Shown here piece by piece: positions 33,199 to 64,000 of a stretch of 64,000 nt of DNA. The stretch covers positions 1-64,000 of IMG/VR virus record IMGVR_UViG_3300025364_000003, one strand, 5' to 3'. The notes below the pieces were generated by a model, which was given only the letters and a program-made list of their open reading frames with translations, made no database searches and was not told where the DNA came from. Positions within the stretch are counted from its first letter, which is position 1; the number at the start of each line of letters is the position of its first letter. A program made the position numbers and the translations under genes.

Positions 33199-33271
33199 AA
33201 GCCAGTAGTTTACAACAGGAAAAATACCTCATTTTTATGAGGAGACTCCGGTTCAAATCCGGGCTGGTTTC
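33199..33271 (+). tRNA. aberrant tRNA-like element (Lys/TTT-like, 6-nt anticodon loop)
   Basis: AAGCCAG/CTGGTTT acceptor, GTTT/AAAT D stem, CCTCA-TTTTTA-TGAGG, TCCGG-TTCAAAT-CCGGG. Confidence 0.6.
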
Positions 33272-33274
33272 CTA

Positions 33275-58618: not shown

Positions 58619-58942
58619 ATGGGCATTTCATCCGAAAATTGGTTCCCTCCTTCGTATTCATCTGAGCTGGTAACTAAGCTAAAAGCTAAAAATCAAGATT
58701 CTTGTTTTGCTCCACCATGGAAGAAAACACACTGTTATCATCGAGCTGTTCCTGGTTTTAGTCCAGAATTACAATGCAAGAGAAATCCAGTTTGGTGGCA
58801 CCCAGATTGCGTGGATGCCTATTGTGATTTTCATGTGACCACAAGAATGAAAAAGTACATGCGGGCAAAGTGGGCTCGTAGCTTATATCAAATGACAATA
58901 GATGAAATCTGTTTAGCCTATCCTCATATCACGCTTTTCTAA
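58619..58942 (+). CDS. Trp/Cys-rich paralog family B member
   Basis: WFPPSYSSEL ... C ... WWHP ... YCDFH ... W. Confidence 0.65.
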   Translation: MGISSENWFPPSYSSELVTKLKAKNQDSCFAPPWKKTHCYHRAVPGFSPELQCKRNPVWWHPDCVDAYCDFHVTTRMKKYMRAKWARSLYQMTIDEICLAYPHITLF

Positions 58943-59298
58943 TGAATAAAAAATACAAATCATCTGTAAACTTTTCCCCGCCCAATTTTTGGACCCCTCC
59001 CAGGTATACAAGAGAGTATGCACAACATATTGCTGAAAGAATTAGCTATTACCACGACGTGGTACTGCATTCCAAAATAGAGTTTCCGTTGTACAGGGGT
59101 ACAAAACTAACATGCAGCAACGGTTATTGTAAATCAAATTCGGATGACATTTGGTGGACCCCGATAAAAAGCGAAAGCTCATACTGTTCAGCATGTGCAA
59201 CACCAAATTATAAATCTAGCGTATATCGCCAATGGCTAATAACCAGCTATTTCTACTTTCTGGACAATAAAGGCTTATTAGAGAAGTTTGTCAAATAA
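58942..59298 (+). CDS. paralog family B member
   Basis: WTPPRYTRE ... WWTP ... YCSAC ... W. Confidence 0.65.
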   Translation: MNKKYKSSVNFSPPNFWTPPRYTREYAQHIAERISYYHDVVLHSKIEFPLYRGTKLTCSNGYCKSNSDDIWWTPIKSESSYCSACATPNYKSSVYRQWLITSYFYFLDNKGLLEKFVK

Positions 59299-59318
59299 AC
59301 ACTAAGGAGATAAACGAG

Positions 59319-59713
59319 ATGACGCAAACAAGCCAAGTGACCAAATTGGTTCCAGAAAATTGGTCACCTCCCAAGTGGTCCAAGGAATTAATGAAAGAGT
59401 TTCATGATTTAATGTTGCCACATATGAAATATGATAACCACAGACACAAAATTCAATTCTTAAATCAAAAGCCTCTTTGCGTCGTCAAAAAAGCAAAAAC
59501 CTCGCCACTGGTATCATTTGAGTACAATTACATTCCTTGTAACAAGGACCTTGTAACAAGGATGGAGTTTGGTGGGCTCCTGTTGTTACAGATACTTATT
59601 GCGAAGAGTGTATTGATTATTTTCTCAAAGATATTTTTTACACCATTTGGCAGCAAATAAAAGTGGAGCTTACCTATTGTCGTCTTAACAAATTTTGGCG
59701 GCTCCATGAGTAA
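59319..59713 (+). pseudogene. paralog family B member frameshifted by a 14-bp tandem duplication
   Basis: CCTTGTAACAAGGA x2 at 59535-59562; removing one copy restores CNKDGVWWAPVVTDTYCEEC...LHE*. Confidence 0.8.
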
Positions 59714-59984
59714 GCAAGATTTAGCAACCAAACGAATGGATATATACAAAGCCAAGCCTGGTATGTTGGTTGTAAACCAAACATGGCTTTCGTGTCTTGA
59801 TCATAACAATTTGAAAATTCAGCTCACCCCCTACAAACTTATGCTTCTGGTCAGTGTTGAGGTTTTCATATATAAAAATCGCTGTTACGTTCGAAGCGAC
59901 ATTCTGTTAGAAGAAAAAGTTTATCGGCTTCTCGAACTAAGCAAAGAAAAATGGAATGAAAGTTTTAGAATAGTCTTACCATGA
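59706..59984 (+). CDS. paralog family A member
   Basis: AKPGMLVV ... LMLLV ... LLEEKVY. Confidence 0.6.
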   Translation: MSKQDLATKRMDIYKAKPGMLVVNQTWLSCLDHNNLKIQLTPYKLMLLVSVEVFIYKNRCYVRSDILLEEKVYRLLELSKEKWNESFRIVLP

Positions 59985-60184
59985 ACAAAGAAATGACTAT
60001 GGATTTTAAAATCAAATGCAATGCCGATGGATGCAATCATAGTGCAGACTTCTTCCAAATAAAAAAAACTTGTACTAGCTTTTATTGCTCTGAGCACGCC
60101 CCTTCAAAACTAAGACGACAATACCAACGAAAAAAGAGATATAATTTGATTCTAAGCAGAATTAATGAAGGTACAATAAAATAA
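59981..60184 (+). CDS. small Cys/His protein (family B-like)
   Basis: CNADGC ... FYCSEH. Confidence 0.5.
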   Translation: MNKEMTMDFKIKCNADGCNHSADFFQIKKTCTSFYCSEHAPSKLRRQYQRKKRYNLILSRINEGTIK

Positions 60185-60225
60185 ATGATATTAGCACCAA
60201 TATGCTTGATTGAAAAAAGATAATC

Positions 60226-60534
60226 ATGGATATTCTCTCAGAACCAGATTGGAGACCACCAAAAATAAGCAGTGAACTGCTTATCAAAATAAAGCCGTTC
60301 ATCCATGATTATGAATATTTCATGGCTACCGAACATAAATGCCAACACTTTGTCTCTACCGTAGATGAAAAATATGAATGTCACAATGAAATAACTTGGT
60401 GGTGCCCACAGTCAGGCGATTGCTTTTGCGAAGAACATGTCACCTCAGGATTAACCAATTTTCTAAAACAACAATGGCGATGGATTCGATATCAATACTT
60501 TATCAAAGAAATCTTTCCTAAACTTAAGAAATAA
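60226..60534 (+). CDS. paralog family B member
   Basis: WRPPKISSEL ... WWCP ... FCEEH ... W. Confidence 0.7.
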   Translation: MDILSEPDWRPPKISSELLIKIKPFIHDYEYFMATEHKCQHFVSTVDEKYECHNEITWWCPQSGDCFCEEHVTSGLTNFLKQQWRWIRYQYFIKEIFPKLKK

Positions 60535-60565
60535 CCATTTCTTATAAGTTTTTGGCGCCCCCCAT

Positions 60566-60889
60566 ATGACATATCATCCCAATATCCTCCAGAAAAATAA
60601 ACACAACATATGGACCCCTCCCAAGTGGTCCAATGAACTAATACTCTGGTGTGAACAATACTCCTCCATCTCAGATTACCTAAAGTTCTCCCCACCCCAC
60701 TGCTCAGCTTGTAACTCATACCCCATATGGTGGTTCCCACAGACTTATATCGCCTACTGCCAAAAACACGCAGACAAAGGTTGGGTCTCCCTATGTTCCA
60801 AAGTCTGGTTCCAAACCCTCTATGAATTCAACCTCTTCCTACTAACAAAAGAAGGGAAAATACCACATGACCCATATGCCAAACTGTAA
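60566..60889 (+). CDS. paralog family B member
   Basis: WTPPKWSNEL ... WWFP ... YCQKH ... W. Confidence 0.7.
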   Translation: MTYHPNILQKNKHNIWTPPKWSNELILWCEQYSSISDYLKFSPPHCSACNSYPIWWFPQTYIAYCQKHADKGWVSLCSKVWFQTLYEFNLFLLTKEGKIPHDPYAKL

Positions 60890-60900
60890 ACTGCACACAA

Positions 60901-61167
60901 ATGAAAATTGCACTTATAAGTTTCATCAAATACAACATACTAAACCCTAACAATAGACCACTAGTAGAACTACCCTCCTGTATCAATAAACTTAGCCTCA
61001 CTAAACATATAGGTCACATTTGGTGGCAACCCTTCTCAGATATCGCTGTATGACAAAATCATCTCGATAACGTCCATAAATCCTGGTTCTATACCAAATG
61101 GTTACTACTCAAATATCATAGAACTCTAACACATATTCAAGAAATATTCCACTCCTACTACCAATAA
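60901..61167 (+). pseudogene. paralog family B member with in-frame TGA at the conserved Cys
   Basis: IWWQPFSDIAV*QNH versus IWWFPQTYIAYCQKH in the neighbour; TGA 61051-61053. Confidence 0.65.
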
Positions 61168-61375
61168 CTTCTCTAACAAAAGACACATAATTTTTTTCAT
61201 AACAATTTCTATATTCCGTCAGATGAGGTTTTTTAAAGAATGTTTACTTTTGGCCTGTTATGTGCGATTATGAGGCAAGAGAGGGTACTGAGGGGGTTTT
61301 GAGAGAGCTTTAGGGGTGCTTTAGGGGTAATACCCCTTCACGGAACGATTCTCATGGGAAAACGAAAACGTTGAT
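61168..61375. other. non-coding strand-skew switch point; candidate replication origin or genome terminus
   Basis: C-rich/G-poor to the left, G-rich/C-poor to the right; GCTTTAGGGGT x2 and palindrome AGGGGTA-A-TACCCCT. Confidence 0.45.
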
Positions 61376-62020
61376 ATGGATACAAAAACGCACATTTTGA
61401 CTCGATCTCTCCCTAAGGGGGAAACAACTTTGGGGGAGTCATCTTCTGGGGGATTTGCATCAACTAGTAGTTCTGGTTCTACTGTGGTATTGAAGGATTA
61501 TCGTCCTAGGTGGTCCAATCATCTTTTTGGTCCGGGTACATTGGTAGAGACGAGGCACAGTTATGGTGGTAAGGGATTGGTTAGGAGGGTGAGTCAGTAT
61601 CCTGGGTTAATGAAGAGGGGGTATGGGACTGAACATGCTATTGAGTTTAGTTGGTATGTGAGGATGGACTCATCTGTTCTACCTGAGGGAGAAGAGATGT
61701 TGTTGGGCAGGATAAGGGAAATTGCGTATCAGGATGGTGGTCGGGAGCCATTGAGGTTTCCTGATTCTCCTTATAGTGCGAAGTTGGTACCGGTTGGTGC
61801 CCTGGGTATGGTGGTGACTTATGTTAGGGTGGGGAGAACATTTACATTTCTTGAAGAAGAATTTCTTCCTTCGTTGGATGACCCAAATTTCTATATTGTT
61901 TACTTTCAGGAATACCTTGACATTGTTAAAGCAGGACTTTATTTGGTTCCTGTAAAAGAAACAAAAAAAGCGAAAGAAAGAACTTCTTATGAAGAAGGTT
62001 TAGAGATTAGTGTTTGGTAA
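61376..62020 (+). CDS. hypothetical protein (family A-like C-terminal part)
   Basis: FGPGTLVE ... LGMVV ... YIVYF. Confidence 0.55.
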   Translation: MDTKTHILTRSLPKGETTLGESSSGGFASTSSSGSTVVLKDYRPRWSNHLFGPGTLVETRHSYGGKGLVRRVSQYPGLMKRGYGTEHAIEFSWYVRMDSSVLPEGEEMLLGRIREIAYQDGGREPLRFPDSPYSAKLVPVGALGMVVTYVRVGRTFTFLEEEFLPSLDDPNFYIVYFQEYLDIVKAGLYLVPVKETKKAKERTSYEEGLEISVW

Positions 62021-62041
62021 ACAAAAGAAAGAATATTAAAG

Positions 62042-62100
62042 AAAAAAGCATGACAACCAATTAAGGTGTCATGCAATTAAGGTGTCATGCTTTTCTTTTG
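62042..62100. terminator. bidirectional terminator containing a 16-bp tandem duplication
   Basis: AAAAAAGCATGACA...TGTCATGCTTTT; CAATTAAGGTGTCATG x2 at 62058-62089; convergent genes. Confidence 0.75.
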
Positions 62101-62112
62101 TGTCAAGTCACT

Positions 62113-62475
62113 TTAGTTATTTTTCATACGAAACTTTTTTATGTATCGAAGATCTTTTTTTTCGATCCAAATTTTTGCTTCTTGATTGAAGAAAGAAAAG
62201 TAAGTGTAAGGAGAGAACATTCCATCTGTTCTCTGAACAATTGTTTCGCCAATGTAAACAAAGGGAGGAGAGCCTACCCATCTCCAGGCCCAGGCCCCTG
62301 TAATCTTACGGTCATCTTCAGAAGAGTAAGCAACAGGTTCCGTGTTCTTTCTTCTGGTATAGAGCTTACCTACCTGTAGTAGGATAGGCTTACCAGGATA
62401 AGTGTGAAAATATGAAGGAGCCTGACCTTGTGAGAATTCCCCAGGGTTGTAGATGTAACGATCAGGCTCCCTCAT
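62113..62475 (-). CDS. paralog family A member
   Basis: LQVGKLYT ... FVYIG ... FFNQEAKIWI. Confidence 0.55.
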   Translation of the reverse strand: MREPDRYIYNPGEFSQGQAPSYFHTYPGKPILLQVGKLYTRRKNTEPVAYSSEDDRKITGAWAWRWVGSPPFVYIGETIVQRTDGMFSPYTYFSFFNQEAKIWIEKKDLRYIKKFRMKNN

Positions 62476-62543
62476 TTTTCTTTTTTCTCCGTAGCGCTTG
62501 ACCTGCTTTAGTTTATTAACGTCGTTTTCTAAAATAGAACAGT

Positions 62544-63995
62544 CTAATACCTTTTGAAAGCTTTGTCTCGCTTCATCTGAACTGCGAGGTCGCCCTTACG
62601 GACGGCATCCATGGTACCATGCTCGGTGATGACCCAGATCACACGGGTTCCGATGATCTGACCCATGGTCGGAGCATAGCCATCGGTGAGCATAACGATG
62701 CCGGCCCACTTGCCTCGGTTCTCGGGGAGGTTCATGAAATTCCGAACGCAGTCAAAATCGGTACCACCGCAGCGGGTACGATGGGCAGGAGGGAAGGGAC
62801 GCCCCTTCTTCCAGACCGTGTGACTCCTCTCGTCCACCTGAGTATCGAAGTGATAGACATCGAGGTCGGTTTCACCAGCGAAGGACTCAAGCTCAGAGAA
62901 CAACATTGCGATATCGTCATCGCTCATGGAACCCGACTGGTCGATGAAGCAAGCAAAGTTGGCCTTGTACTTGCGCTTGTAGCCTGGGAACATGTAAGGC
63001 GCCTTCTTGTTGATGCGCTTGATGGTGCTGTTACGCTCCATGGAACGACAACGACCGATGAACTGACGAAGGATGGAACGCCAGTCGATTTCCCTGGAAA
63101 GAATCTTACGAATGATTTCCGCAATTTCCAACGGAACCGAGCCCCAATCGTTGGTACGATCGGCACGCTTCACAGCCTTTTCGAGAACGTCACGGACCTT
63201 GTCACGAATCTGCTCCTTGACTTCCTCAGGGAGTTCGCCCCATTTTCCGTGGTCATCGATCGATGACATGCCCTTACCGACAGCGACGGTAACGGAATTT
63301 CCGTTCCCATTCTTCTTCTGCTCTTCTTCGATTTCTCGGAGCTTCTCGAAATAGAAGTCTGAGGACTCCATCTTTGGAGCGTTGGCGATAAACTCTGCGT
63401 AGGGACCATCAATTTCCTTGCCGGTAGCAGGATCAATGGGGTTCTTGCCGGGGATCAAGCAAGCGTCTGGGAGATTCTTTTCTCCAATGATGGAGTTGAT
63501 TGCAAGGTCGGTTGCCCAATTCCAAAGGACCTGATAATCCTTATCACCGGGAGCACGCTCGAAAATGTGCTGGAAAATCAGGTGGTACATCTCGTGCTTG
63601 ATGACGCCCTGTCGCTGACTCGGGGAGAGCGACTTGAAGAAATTCGGGTTGAAGCCCATGACCACCTCATGACGACGCCCGTTAGGACGAACGCCCACGT
63701 AAGCGGTAGGCATGTCATAGTCCGAGATCTTGGTAACTTCTGCGGACACCGTTCCGATGAACGGATCATTCATGTAGACCTTAAGGAAGTCGTGGTCGAA
63801 CTCACGGGCGCCTACGGTGCGCTCTTCCTCAGCCTTCTTAGCGATCTCACCAATTGCGGCATCGGCAGCAGCCTCGGCTTCCTGCCGAGACATGCCTTGT
63901 TCCTTCATGCGACGTTCGATGATCTGCTCACGGACCTGAGCCTTGATATCGTTCAGTTTTTCTGGAGAGACACCTGCGGTCTTCTTCTCCGACAT
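62544..63995 (-). CDS. metallopeptidase-like + vWA domain protein (DUF2201 type)
   Basis: KHEMYHLIFQH, WNWATDLAIN, MIDAS DQSGS, GGTDF, LTDG. Confidence 0.85.
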   Translation of the reverse strand: MSEKKTAGVSPEKLNDIKAQVREQIIERRMKEQGMSRQEAEAAADAAIGEIAKKAEEERTVGAREFDHDFLKVYMNDPFIGTVSAEVTKISDYDMPTAYVGVRPNGRRHEVVMGFNPNFFKSLSPSQRQGVIKHEMYHLIFQHIFERAPGDKDYQVLWNWATDLAINSIIGEKNLPDACLIPGKNPIDPATGKEIDGPYAEFIANAPKMESSDFYFEKLREIEEEQKKNGNGNSVTVAVGKGMSSIDDHGKWGELPEEVKEQIRDKVRDVLEKAVKRADRTNDWGSVPLEIAEIIRKILSREIDWRSILRQFIGRCRSMERNSTIKRINKKAPYMFPGYKRKYKANFACFIDQSGSMSDDDIAMLFSELESFAGETDLDVYHFDTQVDERSHTVWKKGRPFPPAHRTRCGGTDFDCVRNFMNLPENRGKWAGIVMLTDGYAPTMGQIIGTRVIWVITEHGTMDAVRKGDLAVQMKRDKAFKRY

Positions 63996-64000
63996 TTCCT

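What the first reader, a model, noticed from the sequence alone, without database searches (positions are those of the whole stretch)
60500..61900. Abrupt local strand-skew inversion around a non-coding palindrome
Seen: ~60550-61180 is strikingly C/A-rich and G-poor and ~61260-61860 G/T-rich and C-poor, although genes on both sides are on the + strand, so coding bias cannot explain it; the bias fades with distance. The centre has an AT-rich stretch, GCTTTAGGGGT x2 (61307-61328) and AGGGGTA-A-TACCCCT (61323-61337). Known: C-to-G skew switches mark bidirectional origins. Inference: replication origin, or joined physical genome ends/packaging site, with strong local single-strand mutagenesis.
Basis: partly seen in the sequence, partly recalled or inferred. 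Interest (0 to 1): 0.7.

Follow-up and report, generated by a model that had tools for sequence, protein, structure and literature searches.

The report
Conserved mirror strand-skew switch, huge phage
In a huge phage from a hypersaline lake, a conserved 200-base non-coding element is flanked by two roughly 0.8-kb arms with mirror-image base composition, and the pattern recurs in distant relatives; it looks like a local site where DNA is opened in both directions, most likely an auxiliary replication start, but no function has been shown.

Summary
The left stretch (60,550-61,180) has the lowest G content of the 206-kb contig. The skew jump at about 61,220 is the largest in the contig (z about 7).

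It is not a misassembly. Contigs from five sequencing runs cross the site, and in one run the read depth is level across it.

It is not coding bias. Both arms carry + strand genes, and their synonymous sites are skewed in opposite directions.

The main new result is conservation. ORF R (61,376-62,020) has homologs at 34-56% identity on other metagenome contigs. In all four lineages that keep upstream DNA, the C-rich to G-rich switch lies within about 100 nt of the same conserved non-coding centre. That centre holds two sequence boxes, a promoter-like site, G-runs, and a palindrome that changes sequence but stays palindromic.

The GCTTTAGGGGT repeat is a lineage-specific expansion, present in 1 to 3 copies.

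There is no genome-scale skew switch, so this is not the main bidirectional origin. Joined genome ends or a packaging site are not supported.

My best reading (about 0.4) is a promoter-primed auxiliary initiation zone, like T4 or ColE1 origins, that exposes or miscopies the outward-running strand on each side. Divergent transcription and selection on strand composition remain live rivals.

The parts
58619..61170 (+). Tandem array of small W/C/H-rich paralogs (the c-family). Only the last two copies are skewed.
   Evidence: tblastn within the genome and the family alignment with conserved W.PP..EL, WW.P, C..H.
60518..60552 (+). AT-rich hairpin with a T-run after c1. It marks the outer edge of the left arm.
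   Evidence: Read from the sequence. A negative skew jump lies at about 60,440.
60440..61217 (.). Left arm. The + strand is C/A-rich and G-poor. Its - strand is A .27, C .11, G .27, T .35.
60566..60889 (+). c2, an intact family member. It has the most negative coding-strand GC skew of 298 ORFs (-0.39; third positions -0.50).
60901..61170 (+). c3, a family member that is decaying here. It has an in-frame TGA at 61,051-61,053 at the conserved Cys position. The ortholog is intact in L009, and strain L025 carries a different stop.
61182..61194 (+). Box A (GACACATAATTTT; GGACACRTAATTT in relatives). It occurs once in the 206-kb contig.
61204..61222 (+). Box B (AATTTCTATATTCCGTCAG). Relatives carry 2-4 direct copies of TTCCTATAT. 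The cumulative skew minimum falls here (61,190-61,217).
61242..61271 (+). Promoter-like site P_R: GTTTAC, an 18-nt spacer ending in TGC, then GATTAT. It lies inside the conserved block GGCCTGTTATGTGCGATTATGAGG.
   Evidence: The motif class is enriched in intergenic DNA, including upstream of tRNA genes. The block is conserved in relatives. The promoter role is inferred.
61292..61453 (+). Cluster of six G4-G5 runs on the + strand at the start of the right arm.
   Evidence: Six observed against 1.1 expected from composition, P<0.0005.
61307..61328 (+). GCTTTAGGGGT x2, a lineage-specific tandem duplication of the left half of the palindrome. Populations carry 1, 2 or 3 copies.
61323..61337 (.). 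Palindrome AGGGGTA-A-TACCCCT. Relatives have a palindrome at the equivalent position with a different sequence (GGGGACT-T-AGTCCCC, GGACT-T-AGTCC).
61339..61354 (+). Conserved block CACGGAACGATTCTCA between the palindrome and the R start codon.
61217..62120 (.). Right arm. The + strand is G/T-rich and C-poor (A .27, C .14, G .28, T .31).
61376..62020 (+). ORF R, 214 aa, of a small family with unknown function. Coding-strand skew is +0.36 and third-position skew +0.70.
   Evidence: No confident fold.
62039..62099 (+). Hairpin with a T-run after R. It includes a 16-mer tandem repeat (62,058-62,090) and marks the outer edge of the right arm.
   Evidence: The relative has one copy fewer.

Best explanation
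The centre (about 61,180-61,360) is a conserved cis-acting initiation site. DNA is opened from it in both directions, so that on each side the strand running 5'-to-3' away from the centre is repeatedly displaced or copied by a lower-fidelity process.

**Proposed mechanism (inferred).**
1. A rightward promoter (P_R, 61,242-61,271) transcribes through a G-run cluster into ORF R.
2. The G-rich transcript forms a persistent RNA-DNA hybrid, which primes rightward DNA synthesis, as at T4 oriF/oriG/oriE and ColE1.
3. Synthesis primed on the displaced strand runs back through the centre and opens the left arm.
4. The displaced or first-copied outward strands gain G and T and lose C and A over about 0.8 kb, until a full replisome or a terminator takes over.

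This would be an auxiliary, early-type origin. It is not the genome's main bidirectional origin.

**Shown:** the mirror composition, its presence at synonymous sites, its anchoring at a conserved non-coding element in five lineages, and the sharp outer edges.

**Inferred:** promoter use, hybrid formation, priming, and any role for ORF R.
For: - The outward strands of the two arms have almost the same composition: A .27, C .11-.14, G .27-.28, T .31-.35.
- Four-fold and two-fold synonymous sites are shifted in mirror fashion in c2 and R (chi-square p = 4e-7 and 1e-5). The same shifts appear, more weakly, in the relatives.
- The left-arm genes are on the + strand, so their skew runs against their own transcription.
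- In L008 the left-arm gene is not a detectable member of the c-family yet is also C-rich, so the effect follows position and not the gene.
- In five lineages the cumulative skew minimum lies -5 to +100 nt from Box A. In the 12-kb locus L008 that point is the largest skew jump.
- Box A, Box B and the other centre motifs occur once in 206 kb, so they are not general promoter motifs.
- Relatives carry Box B as 2-4 direct repeats next to an AT-rich tract.
- G-runs cluster immediately after P_R, and the invariant AAAGGGT block lies downstream of the aligned P_R in the relatives.
- The arm edges coincide with hairpin/T-run sites.
- From established knowledge, not tested here: T4 and ColE1 origins are promoter-primed through RNA-DNA hybrids, and in ColE1 the first several hundred bases are made by a different polymerase and carry a strand-specific mutation footprint.
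Against: - No replication data exist for this phage.
- There is no genome-scale skew switch, and genes left of the site are co-oriented with those on the right. Any origin here is therefore not the dominant one.
- ORF R has no recognisable initiator, helicase or DNA-binding domain and no confident fold.
- The 11-mer repeats are not conserved.
- Strain differences in the left arm are 74% transversions, mostly C<->A. A simple deamination model does not predict this.
- No known origin has been reported with skew this strong confined to about 0.8 kb per side. This rests on my knowledge and on searches, which found none.
- A more distant homolog context (L013) shows no inversion.
Confidence: 0.4

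Rival explanations
1. Back-to-back divergent promoters. P_R drives ORF R rightward, and a phage-specific leftward promoter in the Box A/Box B block drives a roughly 0.7-kb G/U-rich RNA antisense to c2-c3. Heavy transcription, with or without RNA-DNA hybrids, leaves each non-template strand single-stranded and shifts it towards G and T. No replication role is involved.
For: - The right arm runs from the promoter region to the R terminator.
- The left arm ends at a hairpin.
- Ordinary divergent gene pairs in this contig show the same polarity at lower amplitude, for example 164.1 kb.
- The second strongest inversion, at 97.6 kb, is a true divergent gene junction.
- GC skew downstream of promoters is a known mark of hybrid-forming promoters (PMC3787257).
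Against: - No promoter of the GTTTAC class or of the CTATTTA class lies on the - strand near the centre.
- The - strand of the left arm has stops in all frames, so any leftward RNA would be non-coding.
- The amplitude is roughly twice that of the ordinary divergent junction at 164.1 kb (jump 0.81 against 0.42).
- No RNA run was listed, so transcription is untested.
Confidence: 0.27
2. The strand composition is itself selected. The outward strands must stay G/T-rich and C-poor, or the template strands C/A-rich and unstructured, for a function at the DNA or RNA level. Possible functions are loading of a protein that prefers G/T-rich single strands, avoiding cytosines in DNA that is exposed, or structure-free messages. 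Mutations that keep the composition are then neutral.
For: - In the left arm, differences between strains are mostly C<->A. These keep the composition, even inside the c3 pseudogene. Transitions dominate just outside the arm and in the control regions.
- The pattern persists in lineages whose R proteins are only 34-56% identical.
Against: - No specific function is identified.
- There is no long-range complementarity between the arms beyond one 16-nt match.
- The strain comparison rests on one short low-coverage contig and about 40 changes, with no outgroup.
- Part of the C<->A excess sits in one 32-nt cluster that may be a single event or a misalignment.
Confidence: 0.2
3. Physical genome ends or a packaging start site that were joined in assembly.
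For: - Contigs of three runs break at 61.2-61.33 kb.
- In four runs the contig on the right has a higher mean depth.
Against: - The breaks coincide with the 11-mer copy-number polymorphism, and short bridging contigs are present.
- An X5 contig spans 59,685-62,055 at depth 24.8, against 25.0 to its right. The depth step sits at the polymorphic deletion at 59,469-59,685.
- The JGI and IMG/VR contigs of 461 kb carry the site internally.
- The skew polarity is opposite to what 3'-overhang resection would give.
Confidence: 0.04
4. Assembly or sequencing artefact, or chance.
For: None found.
Against: - Identical sequence occurs in five runs and several independent assemblies.
- The pattern recurs in relatives from other studies.
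- Twelve chance matches to the centre motif elsewhere show no inversion.
Confidence: 0.01

Closest known systems
Phage T4 origins oriF(uvsY), oriG(34) and oriE, and the plasmid ColE1 origin (promoter-primed, RNA-DNA hybrid origins)
   Same: - A promoter followed by an easily opened or G-rich stretch.
- The site lies next to, or inside, small genes of unknown function (T4 oriE lies by repEA/repEB and has short direct repeats).
- It would be an auxiliary origin with no genome-scale skew.
- In ColE1 the first several hundred bases are made by another polymerase and carry a strand-specific mutation footprint.

All of this is from established knowledge. None of it was tested here.
   Different: - No sequence or protein similarity to those systems was found.
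- A mirror-image composition block of about 0.8 kb on both sides is not a described feature of them.
- Replication from this site is not shown.
Iteron-type origins (lambda ori, P1 oriR, pPS10/R6K-type plasmids)
   Same: - Direct repeats (Box B in 2-4 copies in relatives).
- An AT-rich tract and a palindrome that shares sequence with a repeat.
- An adjacent gene that could be autoregulated.
   Different: - The repeats are short, and our genome keeps only one clear copy.
- ORF R matches no Rep family.
- The 11-mer repeat is a recent expansion.
GC-skewed, hybrid-forming promoters, including bidirectional CpG-island promoters (PMC3787257)
   Same: - The skew changes sign at a promoter region.
- G-clusters lie just downstream of the start.
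- The skew ends at the transcript's end.
   Different: - Those promoters are eukaryotic, with skew in GC-rich DNA.
- Here a leftward promoter is not evident, and the left arm carries genes on the opposite strand.
Vertebrate mitochondrial strand asymmetry (PMC3269012, PMC10730292)
   Same: One strand becomes G/T-rich, and the complementary strand A/C-rich, through C>T and A>G changes while it is single-stranded during strand-displacement replication.
   Different: - The mitochondrial asymmetry is genome-wide and graded.
- It is not two opposed 0.8-kb blocks.

Membership tests
Main bidirectional replication origin marked by a GC-skew switch | Cumulative GC skew has its global minimum at the site, with opposite slopes over whole replichores | tested here: not met
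   Cumulative skew rises on both sides across 206 kb. Only a local dip of about 1.7 kb is present. The rest of the 461-kb genome could not be read.
Main bidirectional replication origin marked by a GC-skew switch | Genes mostly co-oriented with forks leaving the site | tested here: not met
   Genes at 22-47 kb and 52-61 kb, left of the site, are on the + strand.
Iteron-type origin | Several direct repeats of one binding motif next to an AT-rich unwinding tract | tested here: inconclusive
   TTCCTATAT-type Box B occurs 2-4 times in L006, L007 and L009, but only once clearly in the window. An AT-rich tract is present.
Iteron-type origin | Adjacent gene encodes a recognisable initiator (Rep) protein | tested here: not met
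   ORF R and its six homologs match no Rep family in Pfam or PHROGs. The only match is a sub-threshold hit to a phage single-strand-binding family (E 0.027). Both structure models have low confidence.
Promoter-primed RNA-DNA hybrid origin (T4 oriF/G/E, ColE1) | Promoter directed into the origin | tested here: inconclusive
   A GTTTAC-N18-(TGC)GATTAT site lies at 61,242-61,271. Its class is enriched in intergenic DNA and it is conserved in position in relatives. No transcript data exist.
Promoter-primed RNA-DNA hybrid origin (T4 oriF/G/E, ColE1) | Persistent hybrid and DNA synthesis starting from the RNA 3' end | not testable with these tools
   This needs infected cells. Only the sequence predisposition is seen: G-run clustering and G 33% against C 14% over 61,260-61,860.
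Packaging (pac/cos) site or physical termini | Read-start pile-up or a depth step at the site, with no reads crossing for fixed ends | tested here: not met
   Contigs cross the site in five runs and depth is level across it in X5. Raw read starts were not available because only contigs were held.
Intrinsic terminator (for the palindrome) | GC-rich stem followed by a T-run | tested here: not met
   AGGGGTA-A-TACCCCT is followed by TCACGG, and the terminator scan did not list it.
Known structured RNA family | Match to an Rfam model | tested here: not met
   No match at E<=1 over 60,000-62,600. Apart from a predicted pairing of Box A with the GTTATGTG block that shows no covariation, only the small hairpin is supported, with two compensated pairs among four sequences.

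The most novel reading that the evidence does not exclude
A conserved phage cis-element imposes a strand-specific, spatially bounded mutation regime on the roughly 0.8 kb to each side. This would be a natural counterpart of the ColE1/Pol I origin-proximal mutation footprint. It could make initiation zones readable from sequence alone, and it may serve to speed the evolution of the adjacent early genes (the last c-family copies and ORF R).
Probability: 0.15. Interest if true: 0.85.

Novelty: new variant of a known kind. Interest (0 to 1): 0.62.

Why it matters
Replication origins of huge phages are essentially unmapped, and most of these phages have no cultured host. Suppose a bounded mirror-image composition switch around a conserved non-coding element does mark an initiation zone. 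It would then be a sequence-only signature that could be searched for in other uncultured phages.

It would also show that a local process can reshape codon usage and amino-acid content against a gene's own transcription direction. That matters for gene calling, for codon-based host prediction, and for reading skew plots.

If the cause turns out to be selection on strand composition, or a transversion-prone polymerase, that would be an unusual constraint or mutation source in a virus.

Tried and rejected
- **Similar DNA in public genomes.** DNA searches of E. coli genomes and GenBank phages, and a protein search with ORF R against the phages, found no match.
- **Inverted duplication of the arms.** There is no extended complementarity, and ORF R has no hit on the left arm.
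- **A hidden or recoded gene on the - strand of the left arm.** Stops of all three kinds occur in every frame.
- **A known RNA family.** None matched. The centre as single-stranded DNA folds no better than shuffles.
- **Sigma-70 consensus scan.** It found nothing at the centre. A phage-specific class with a GTTTAC -35 element was found later.
- **The 11-mer as a genome-wide regulatory motif.** It is unique to this locus.
- **Structure of ORF R.** Mean pLDDT was 30 alone and 38 with seven sequences, so no fold search was run. The ESM Atlas model is also poor, and its feature hits look composition-driven.
- **More relatives.** The family alignment in IMG/VR and the centre motif in IMG/VR and JGI contigs returned only this same phage plus chance hits.
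- **'The arms evolve faster than the flanks' (ours against L009).** Dropped. The neighbouring 120/133-aa gene outside the arms is just as divergent, and only the DUF2201 gene is conserved.
- **A conserved upstream small ORF.** Rejected. The reading frame is open in L006 and L009, but the peptide is not conserved with ours and L007 lacks the ATG (read).
- **The whole 461-kb record.** It could not be accessed.
- **RNA runs.** None was listed.
Full report
**What the window is.** The window is the first 64 kb of a single 206,528-nt contig. The contig is a huge tailed phage.
- It encodes a portal protein, a major head protein, two tail-sheath proteins, GroEL, DnaJ, a tyrosyl-tRNA synthetase, an SbcC-like nuclease, a DNA polymerase fragment, homing endonucleases and tRNAs.
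- The same DNA lies inside a 461-kb IMG/VR contig and a 461-kb JGI contig, at about 348.9 kb.
- Five sequencing runs labelled hypersaline lake metagenome hold it. A close relative occurs in microbial-mat metagenomes.

- The stretch 60,550-61,180 has 11.6% G, the lowest of any window of that size in the contig, and 62.9% A+C, the highest.
- The stretch 61,260-61,860 has 14.0% C and 61.9% G+T, the highest G+T.
- The skew jump at 61,220 is 0.81, the largest in the contig, z = 7.0. The cumulative minimum lies at 61,190-61,217.
- The two strongest negative jumps in the contig, near 60,440 and 62,120, bound the arms. The pattern is therefore a block with sharp edges and not a gradual fade.

**It is not an artefact.**
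- Contigs assembled separately from five runs cover the site.
- Where contigs break, at 61.2-61.33 kb, the break coincides with a copy-number polymorphism of the GCTTTAGGGGT unit. Short bridging contigs are present there.
- One X5 contig runs from 59,685 to 62,055 at depth 24.8, against 25.0 for its right-hand neighbour.
- The depth steps seen in other runs sit at a polymorphic 215-nt deletion near 59.5 kb, not at the centre.

**It is not coding bias.**
- The left arm holds the last two members of a tandem family of small W/C/H-rich proteins, all on the + strand. c2 is intact and keeps the family's invariant residues. c3 carries a TGA at the conserved Cys position.
- The - strand has stops of every kind in all frames.
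- c2 has the most negative coding-strand skew of 298 ORFs (-0.39). ORF R is among the three most positive (+0.36). At third codon positions the values are -0.50 and +0.70.
- At four-fold sites c2 has C .49, T .10, G .05 and R has C .04, G .23, T .49. The genome has C .18, G .12, T .39. Two-fold sites shift the same way (chi-square p = 4e-7 and 1e-5).
- Read on the strand that runs 5'-to-3' away from the centre, the two arms have nearly the same composition: A .27, C .11-.14, G .27-.28, T .31-.35.

**The pattern is conserved.** This is the main new result.
- A full HMMER search found six homologs of ORF R at 25-56% identity.
- Their contigs keep the gene order: an array of small + strand genes, a gap, R, one or more small - strand genes, then a DUF2201 gene.
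- In every lineage that retains upstream DNA (L006, L007, L008, L009) the same switch is present. Skew is -0.25 to -0.71 upstream of the centre and +0.1 to +0.56 through the R homolog.
- The cumulative minimum falls -5 to +100 nt from one conserved motif. In the 12-kb locus L008 this point is the largest jump of the locus.
- In L008 the gene in the left arm has no detectable similarity to the c-family, yet it is also C-rich. In L009 the left-arm gene is an intact ortholog of c3.
- Synonymous sites in the relatives shift the same way, more weakly.
- Twelve chance matches to the centre motif elsewhere show no inversion.

**Anatomy of the centre.** An alignment of four lineages shows about 200 nt of non-coding DNA at 71% mean column identity, although their R proteins share only 33-56% identity with ours. 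The elements are:
- Box A (GGACACRTAATTT).
- Box B (AATTYCTATATTCCGT), present in 2-4 direct copies in the relatives.
- A T-run.
- The block GGCCTGTTATGTGCGATTMTGAGG followed by AAAGGGT.
- A palindrome.
- CACGSAACGATTCTCA, and then the R start codon.

Further points about the centre:
- Most of these elements occur once in the 206-kb contig; the short AACGATTCT core has one further match, at 75,327 on the - strand.
- The palindrome differs between lineages but stays palindromic: GGGGTA-A-TACCCC in ours and L009, GGGGACT-T-AGTCCCC in L008, GGACT-T-AGTCC in L007, and imperfect in L006.
It duplicates the left half of the palindrome and is present in 1, 2 or 3 copies in different populations.
- The conserved block holds a promoter-like site: GTTTAC, an 18-nt spacer ending in TGC, then GATTAT (61,242-61,271). 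Sites of this class are strongly enriched in intergenic DNA, including upstream of tRNA genes. None lies on the - strand near the centre.
- The first 250 nt of the right arm, beginning about 25 nt upstream of that site, hold six runs of four or five G, against 1.1 expected.

**What it is not.**
- It is not the genome's main bidirectional origin. Cumulative skew rises on both sides and follows gene orientation.
- It is not a packaging site or joined ends (see above). In addition, resection of ends would enrich G/T on the opposite strands.
- It matches no known RNA family.
- ORF R gives no functional clue. It matches no family above threshold, and its only hit is a sub-threshold match to a phage single-strand-binding family. 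There are no confident models.

**Best explanation and rivals.** Something anchored at the conserved centre acts outward in both directions on the 5'-to-3' outward strands.
- **Replication-type opening.** This accounts for both arms, including a left arm whose genes run towards the centre. The concrete model is a promoter-primed, hybrid-forming auxiliary origin in the manner of T4 and ColE1. I rate it at about 0.4.
- **Divergent transcription.** It explains the right arm well. It needs an unseen leftward promoter and a non-coding antisense RNA. I rate it at about 0.27.
- **Selection on strand composition.** This gains weight from an unexpected result. A strain variant (L025, 94% identical) differs from the window inside the left arm mainly by transversions: 31 of 42 changes, of which 18 are C<->A. 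This holds even within c3, which is a pseudogene in both strains, each with a different stop. Just outside the arm, and in two control regions of another relative, transitions dominate (38 to 8 in all). Simple deamination does not predict this. An error-prone polymerase, oxidised guanine, or selection that tolerates only composition-preserving changes would. The sample is small and has no outgroup, so I leave it unresolved. I rate this rival at about 0.2.

**Novelty.** Skew switches at origins and skewed hybrid-forming promoters are both known. A bounded, mirror-image, roughly 0.8-kb-per-side switch that overrides coding-strand bias and is conserved at a non-coding element across diverged huge phages is not something I know of. 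Four literature searches did not find one. I class it as a new variant of a known kind.

Noticed in passing
window 62,500-64,000, continuing to about 97,550 of the contig (L002, L003): A 35-kb island of 48-66% GC sits inside a genome of about 39% GC. It has short ORFs on both strands, including DUF2201/VWA, a KaiC-like ATPase, an amidoligase and a T4-type RNA ligase. The two strongest skew inversions of the contig lie at or near its two borders. Its left junction is supported by contigs of four runs, and the DUF2201 gene is syntenic in relatives.
   Followed up: partly
contig 97,280-98,500 (L003:15,280-16,500): This is the second strongest skew inversion (0.65). It follows stacked G/C homopolymer hairpins (G8C8, G8TC5, C11) and sits beside two copies of TTTTTGGGAAATTTTGAA. 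A run of C-depleted + strand genes follows (skew up to +0.67; four-fold C .13, G .20 in the first gene). Unlike 61.2 kb, this is a true divergent gene junction.
   Followed up: partly
contig-wide, for example 47,172, 29,904 and 11,428(-) in the window: CTATTTA lies 12-50 nt upstream of many start codons (11 of 19 + strand copies are intergenic), mostly before structural genes. It resembles a T4-late-type promoter element.
   Followed up: partly
window 4,052; 30,538; 42,516; 61,242 and others: GTTTAC-N16-19-TAnnnT sites are enriched in intergenic DNA (9 of 16), including just upstream of tRNA genes. This is a probable early, host-type promoter class.
   Followed up: partly
window 58,619-61,170: A tandem array of at least six small paralogs with invariant W, PP, E, H, C, WW.P, C, W and Y positions, of unknown function. 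No relatives were found in IMG/VR beyond this phage. A 215-nt deletion (59,469-59,685) is polymorphic in runs X4 and X5.
   Followed up: partly
window 60,449 (variant L025): A strain variant carries a 32-nt tandem duplication in the 3' part of c1, which breaks its frame. Together with the two different stops in c3, this suggests the end of the array is decaying in this population.
   Followed up: partly
window 62,058-62,090: The 16-mer CAATTAAGGTGTCATG x2.1 lies inside the hairpin after ORF R. The microbial-mat relative has one copy fewer.
   Followed up: no
window 61,887-61,899: A second exact AATTTCTATATT (the Box B core) lies inside the conserved 3' part of ORF R, where it encodes the family's NFYI motif. 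It sits where the strong skew of the right arm ends. Coincidence or a second binding site was not resolved.
   Followed up: no
window 33,199-33,272: ARAGORN calls a tRNA-like gene with an irregular two-base anticodon loop call (tRNA-???).
   Followed up: no
contig 112,972-116,199 (L030:973-4,200): The portal protein ORF is 1,075 aa and carries an HNH endonuclease domain in its N-terminal part. This is a possible intein or fused homing endonuclease.
   Followed up: no
window 62,287-62,475: The microbial-mat relatives (X6, X7) skip 140 nt here and diverge completely to the right of 62,475, then match again from about 63,050-63,130. This is a local replacement at the island's left edge.
   Followed up: no
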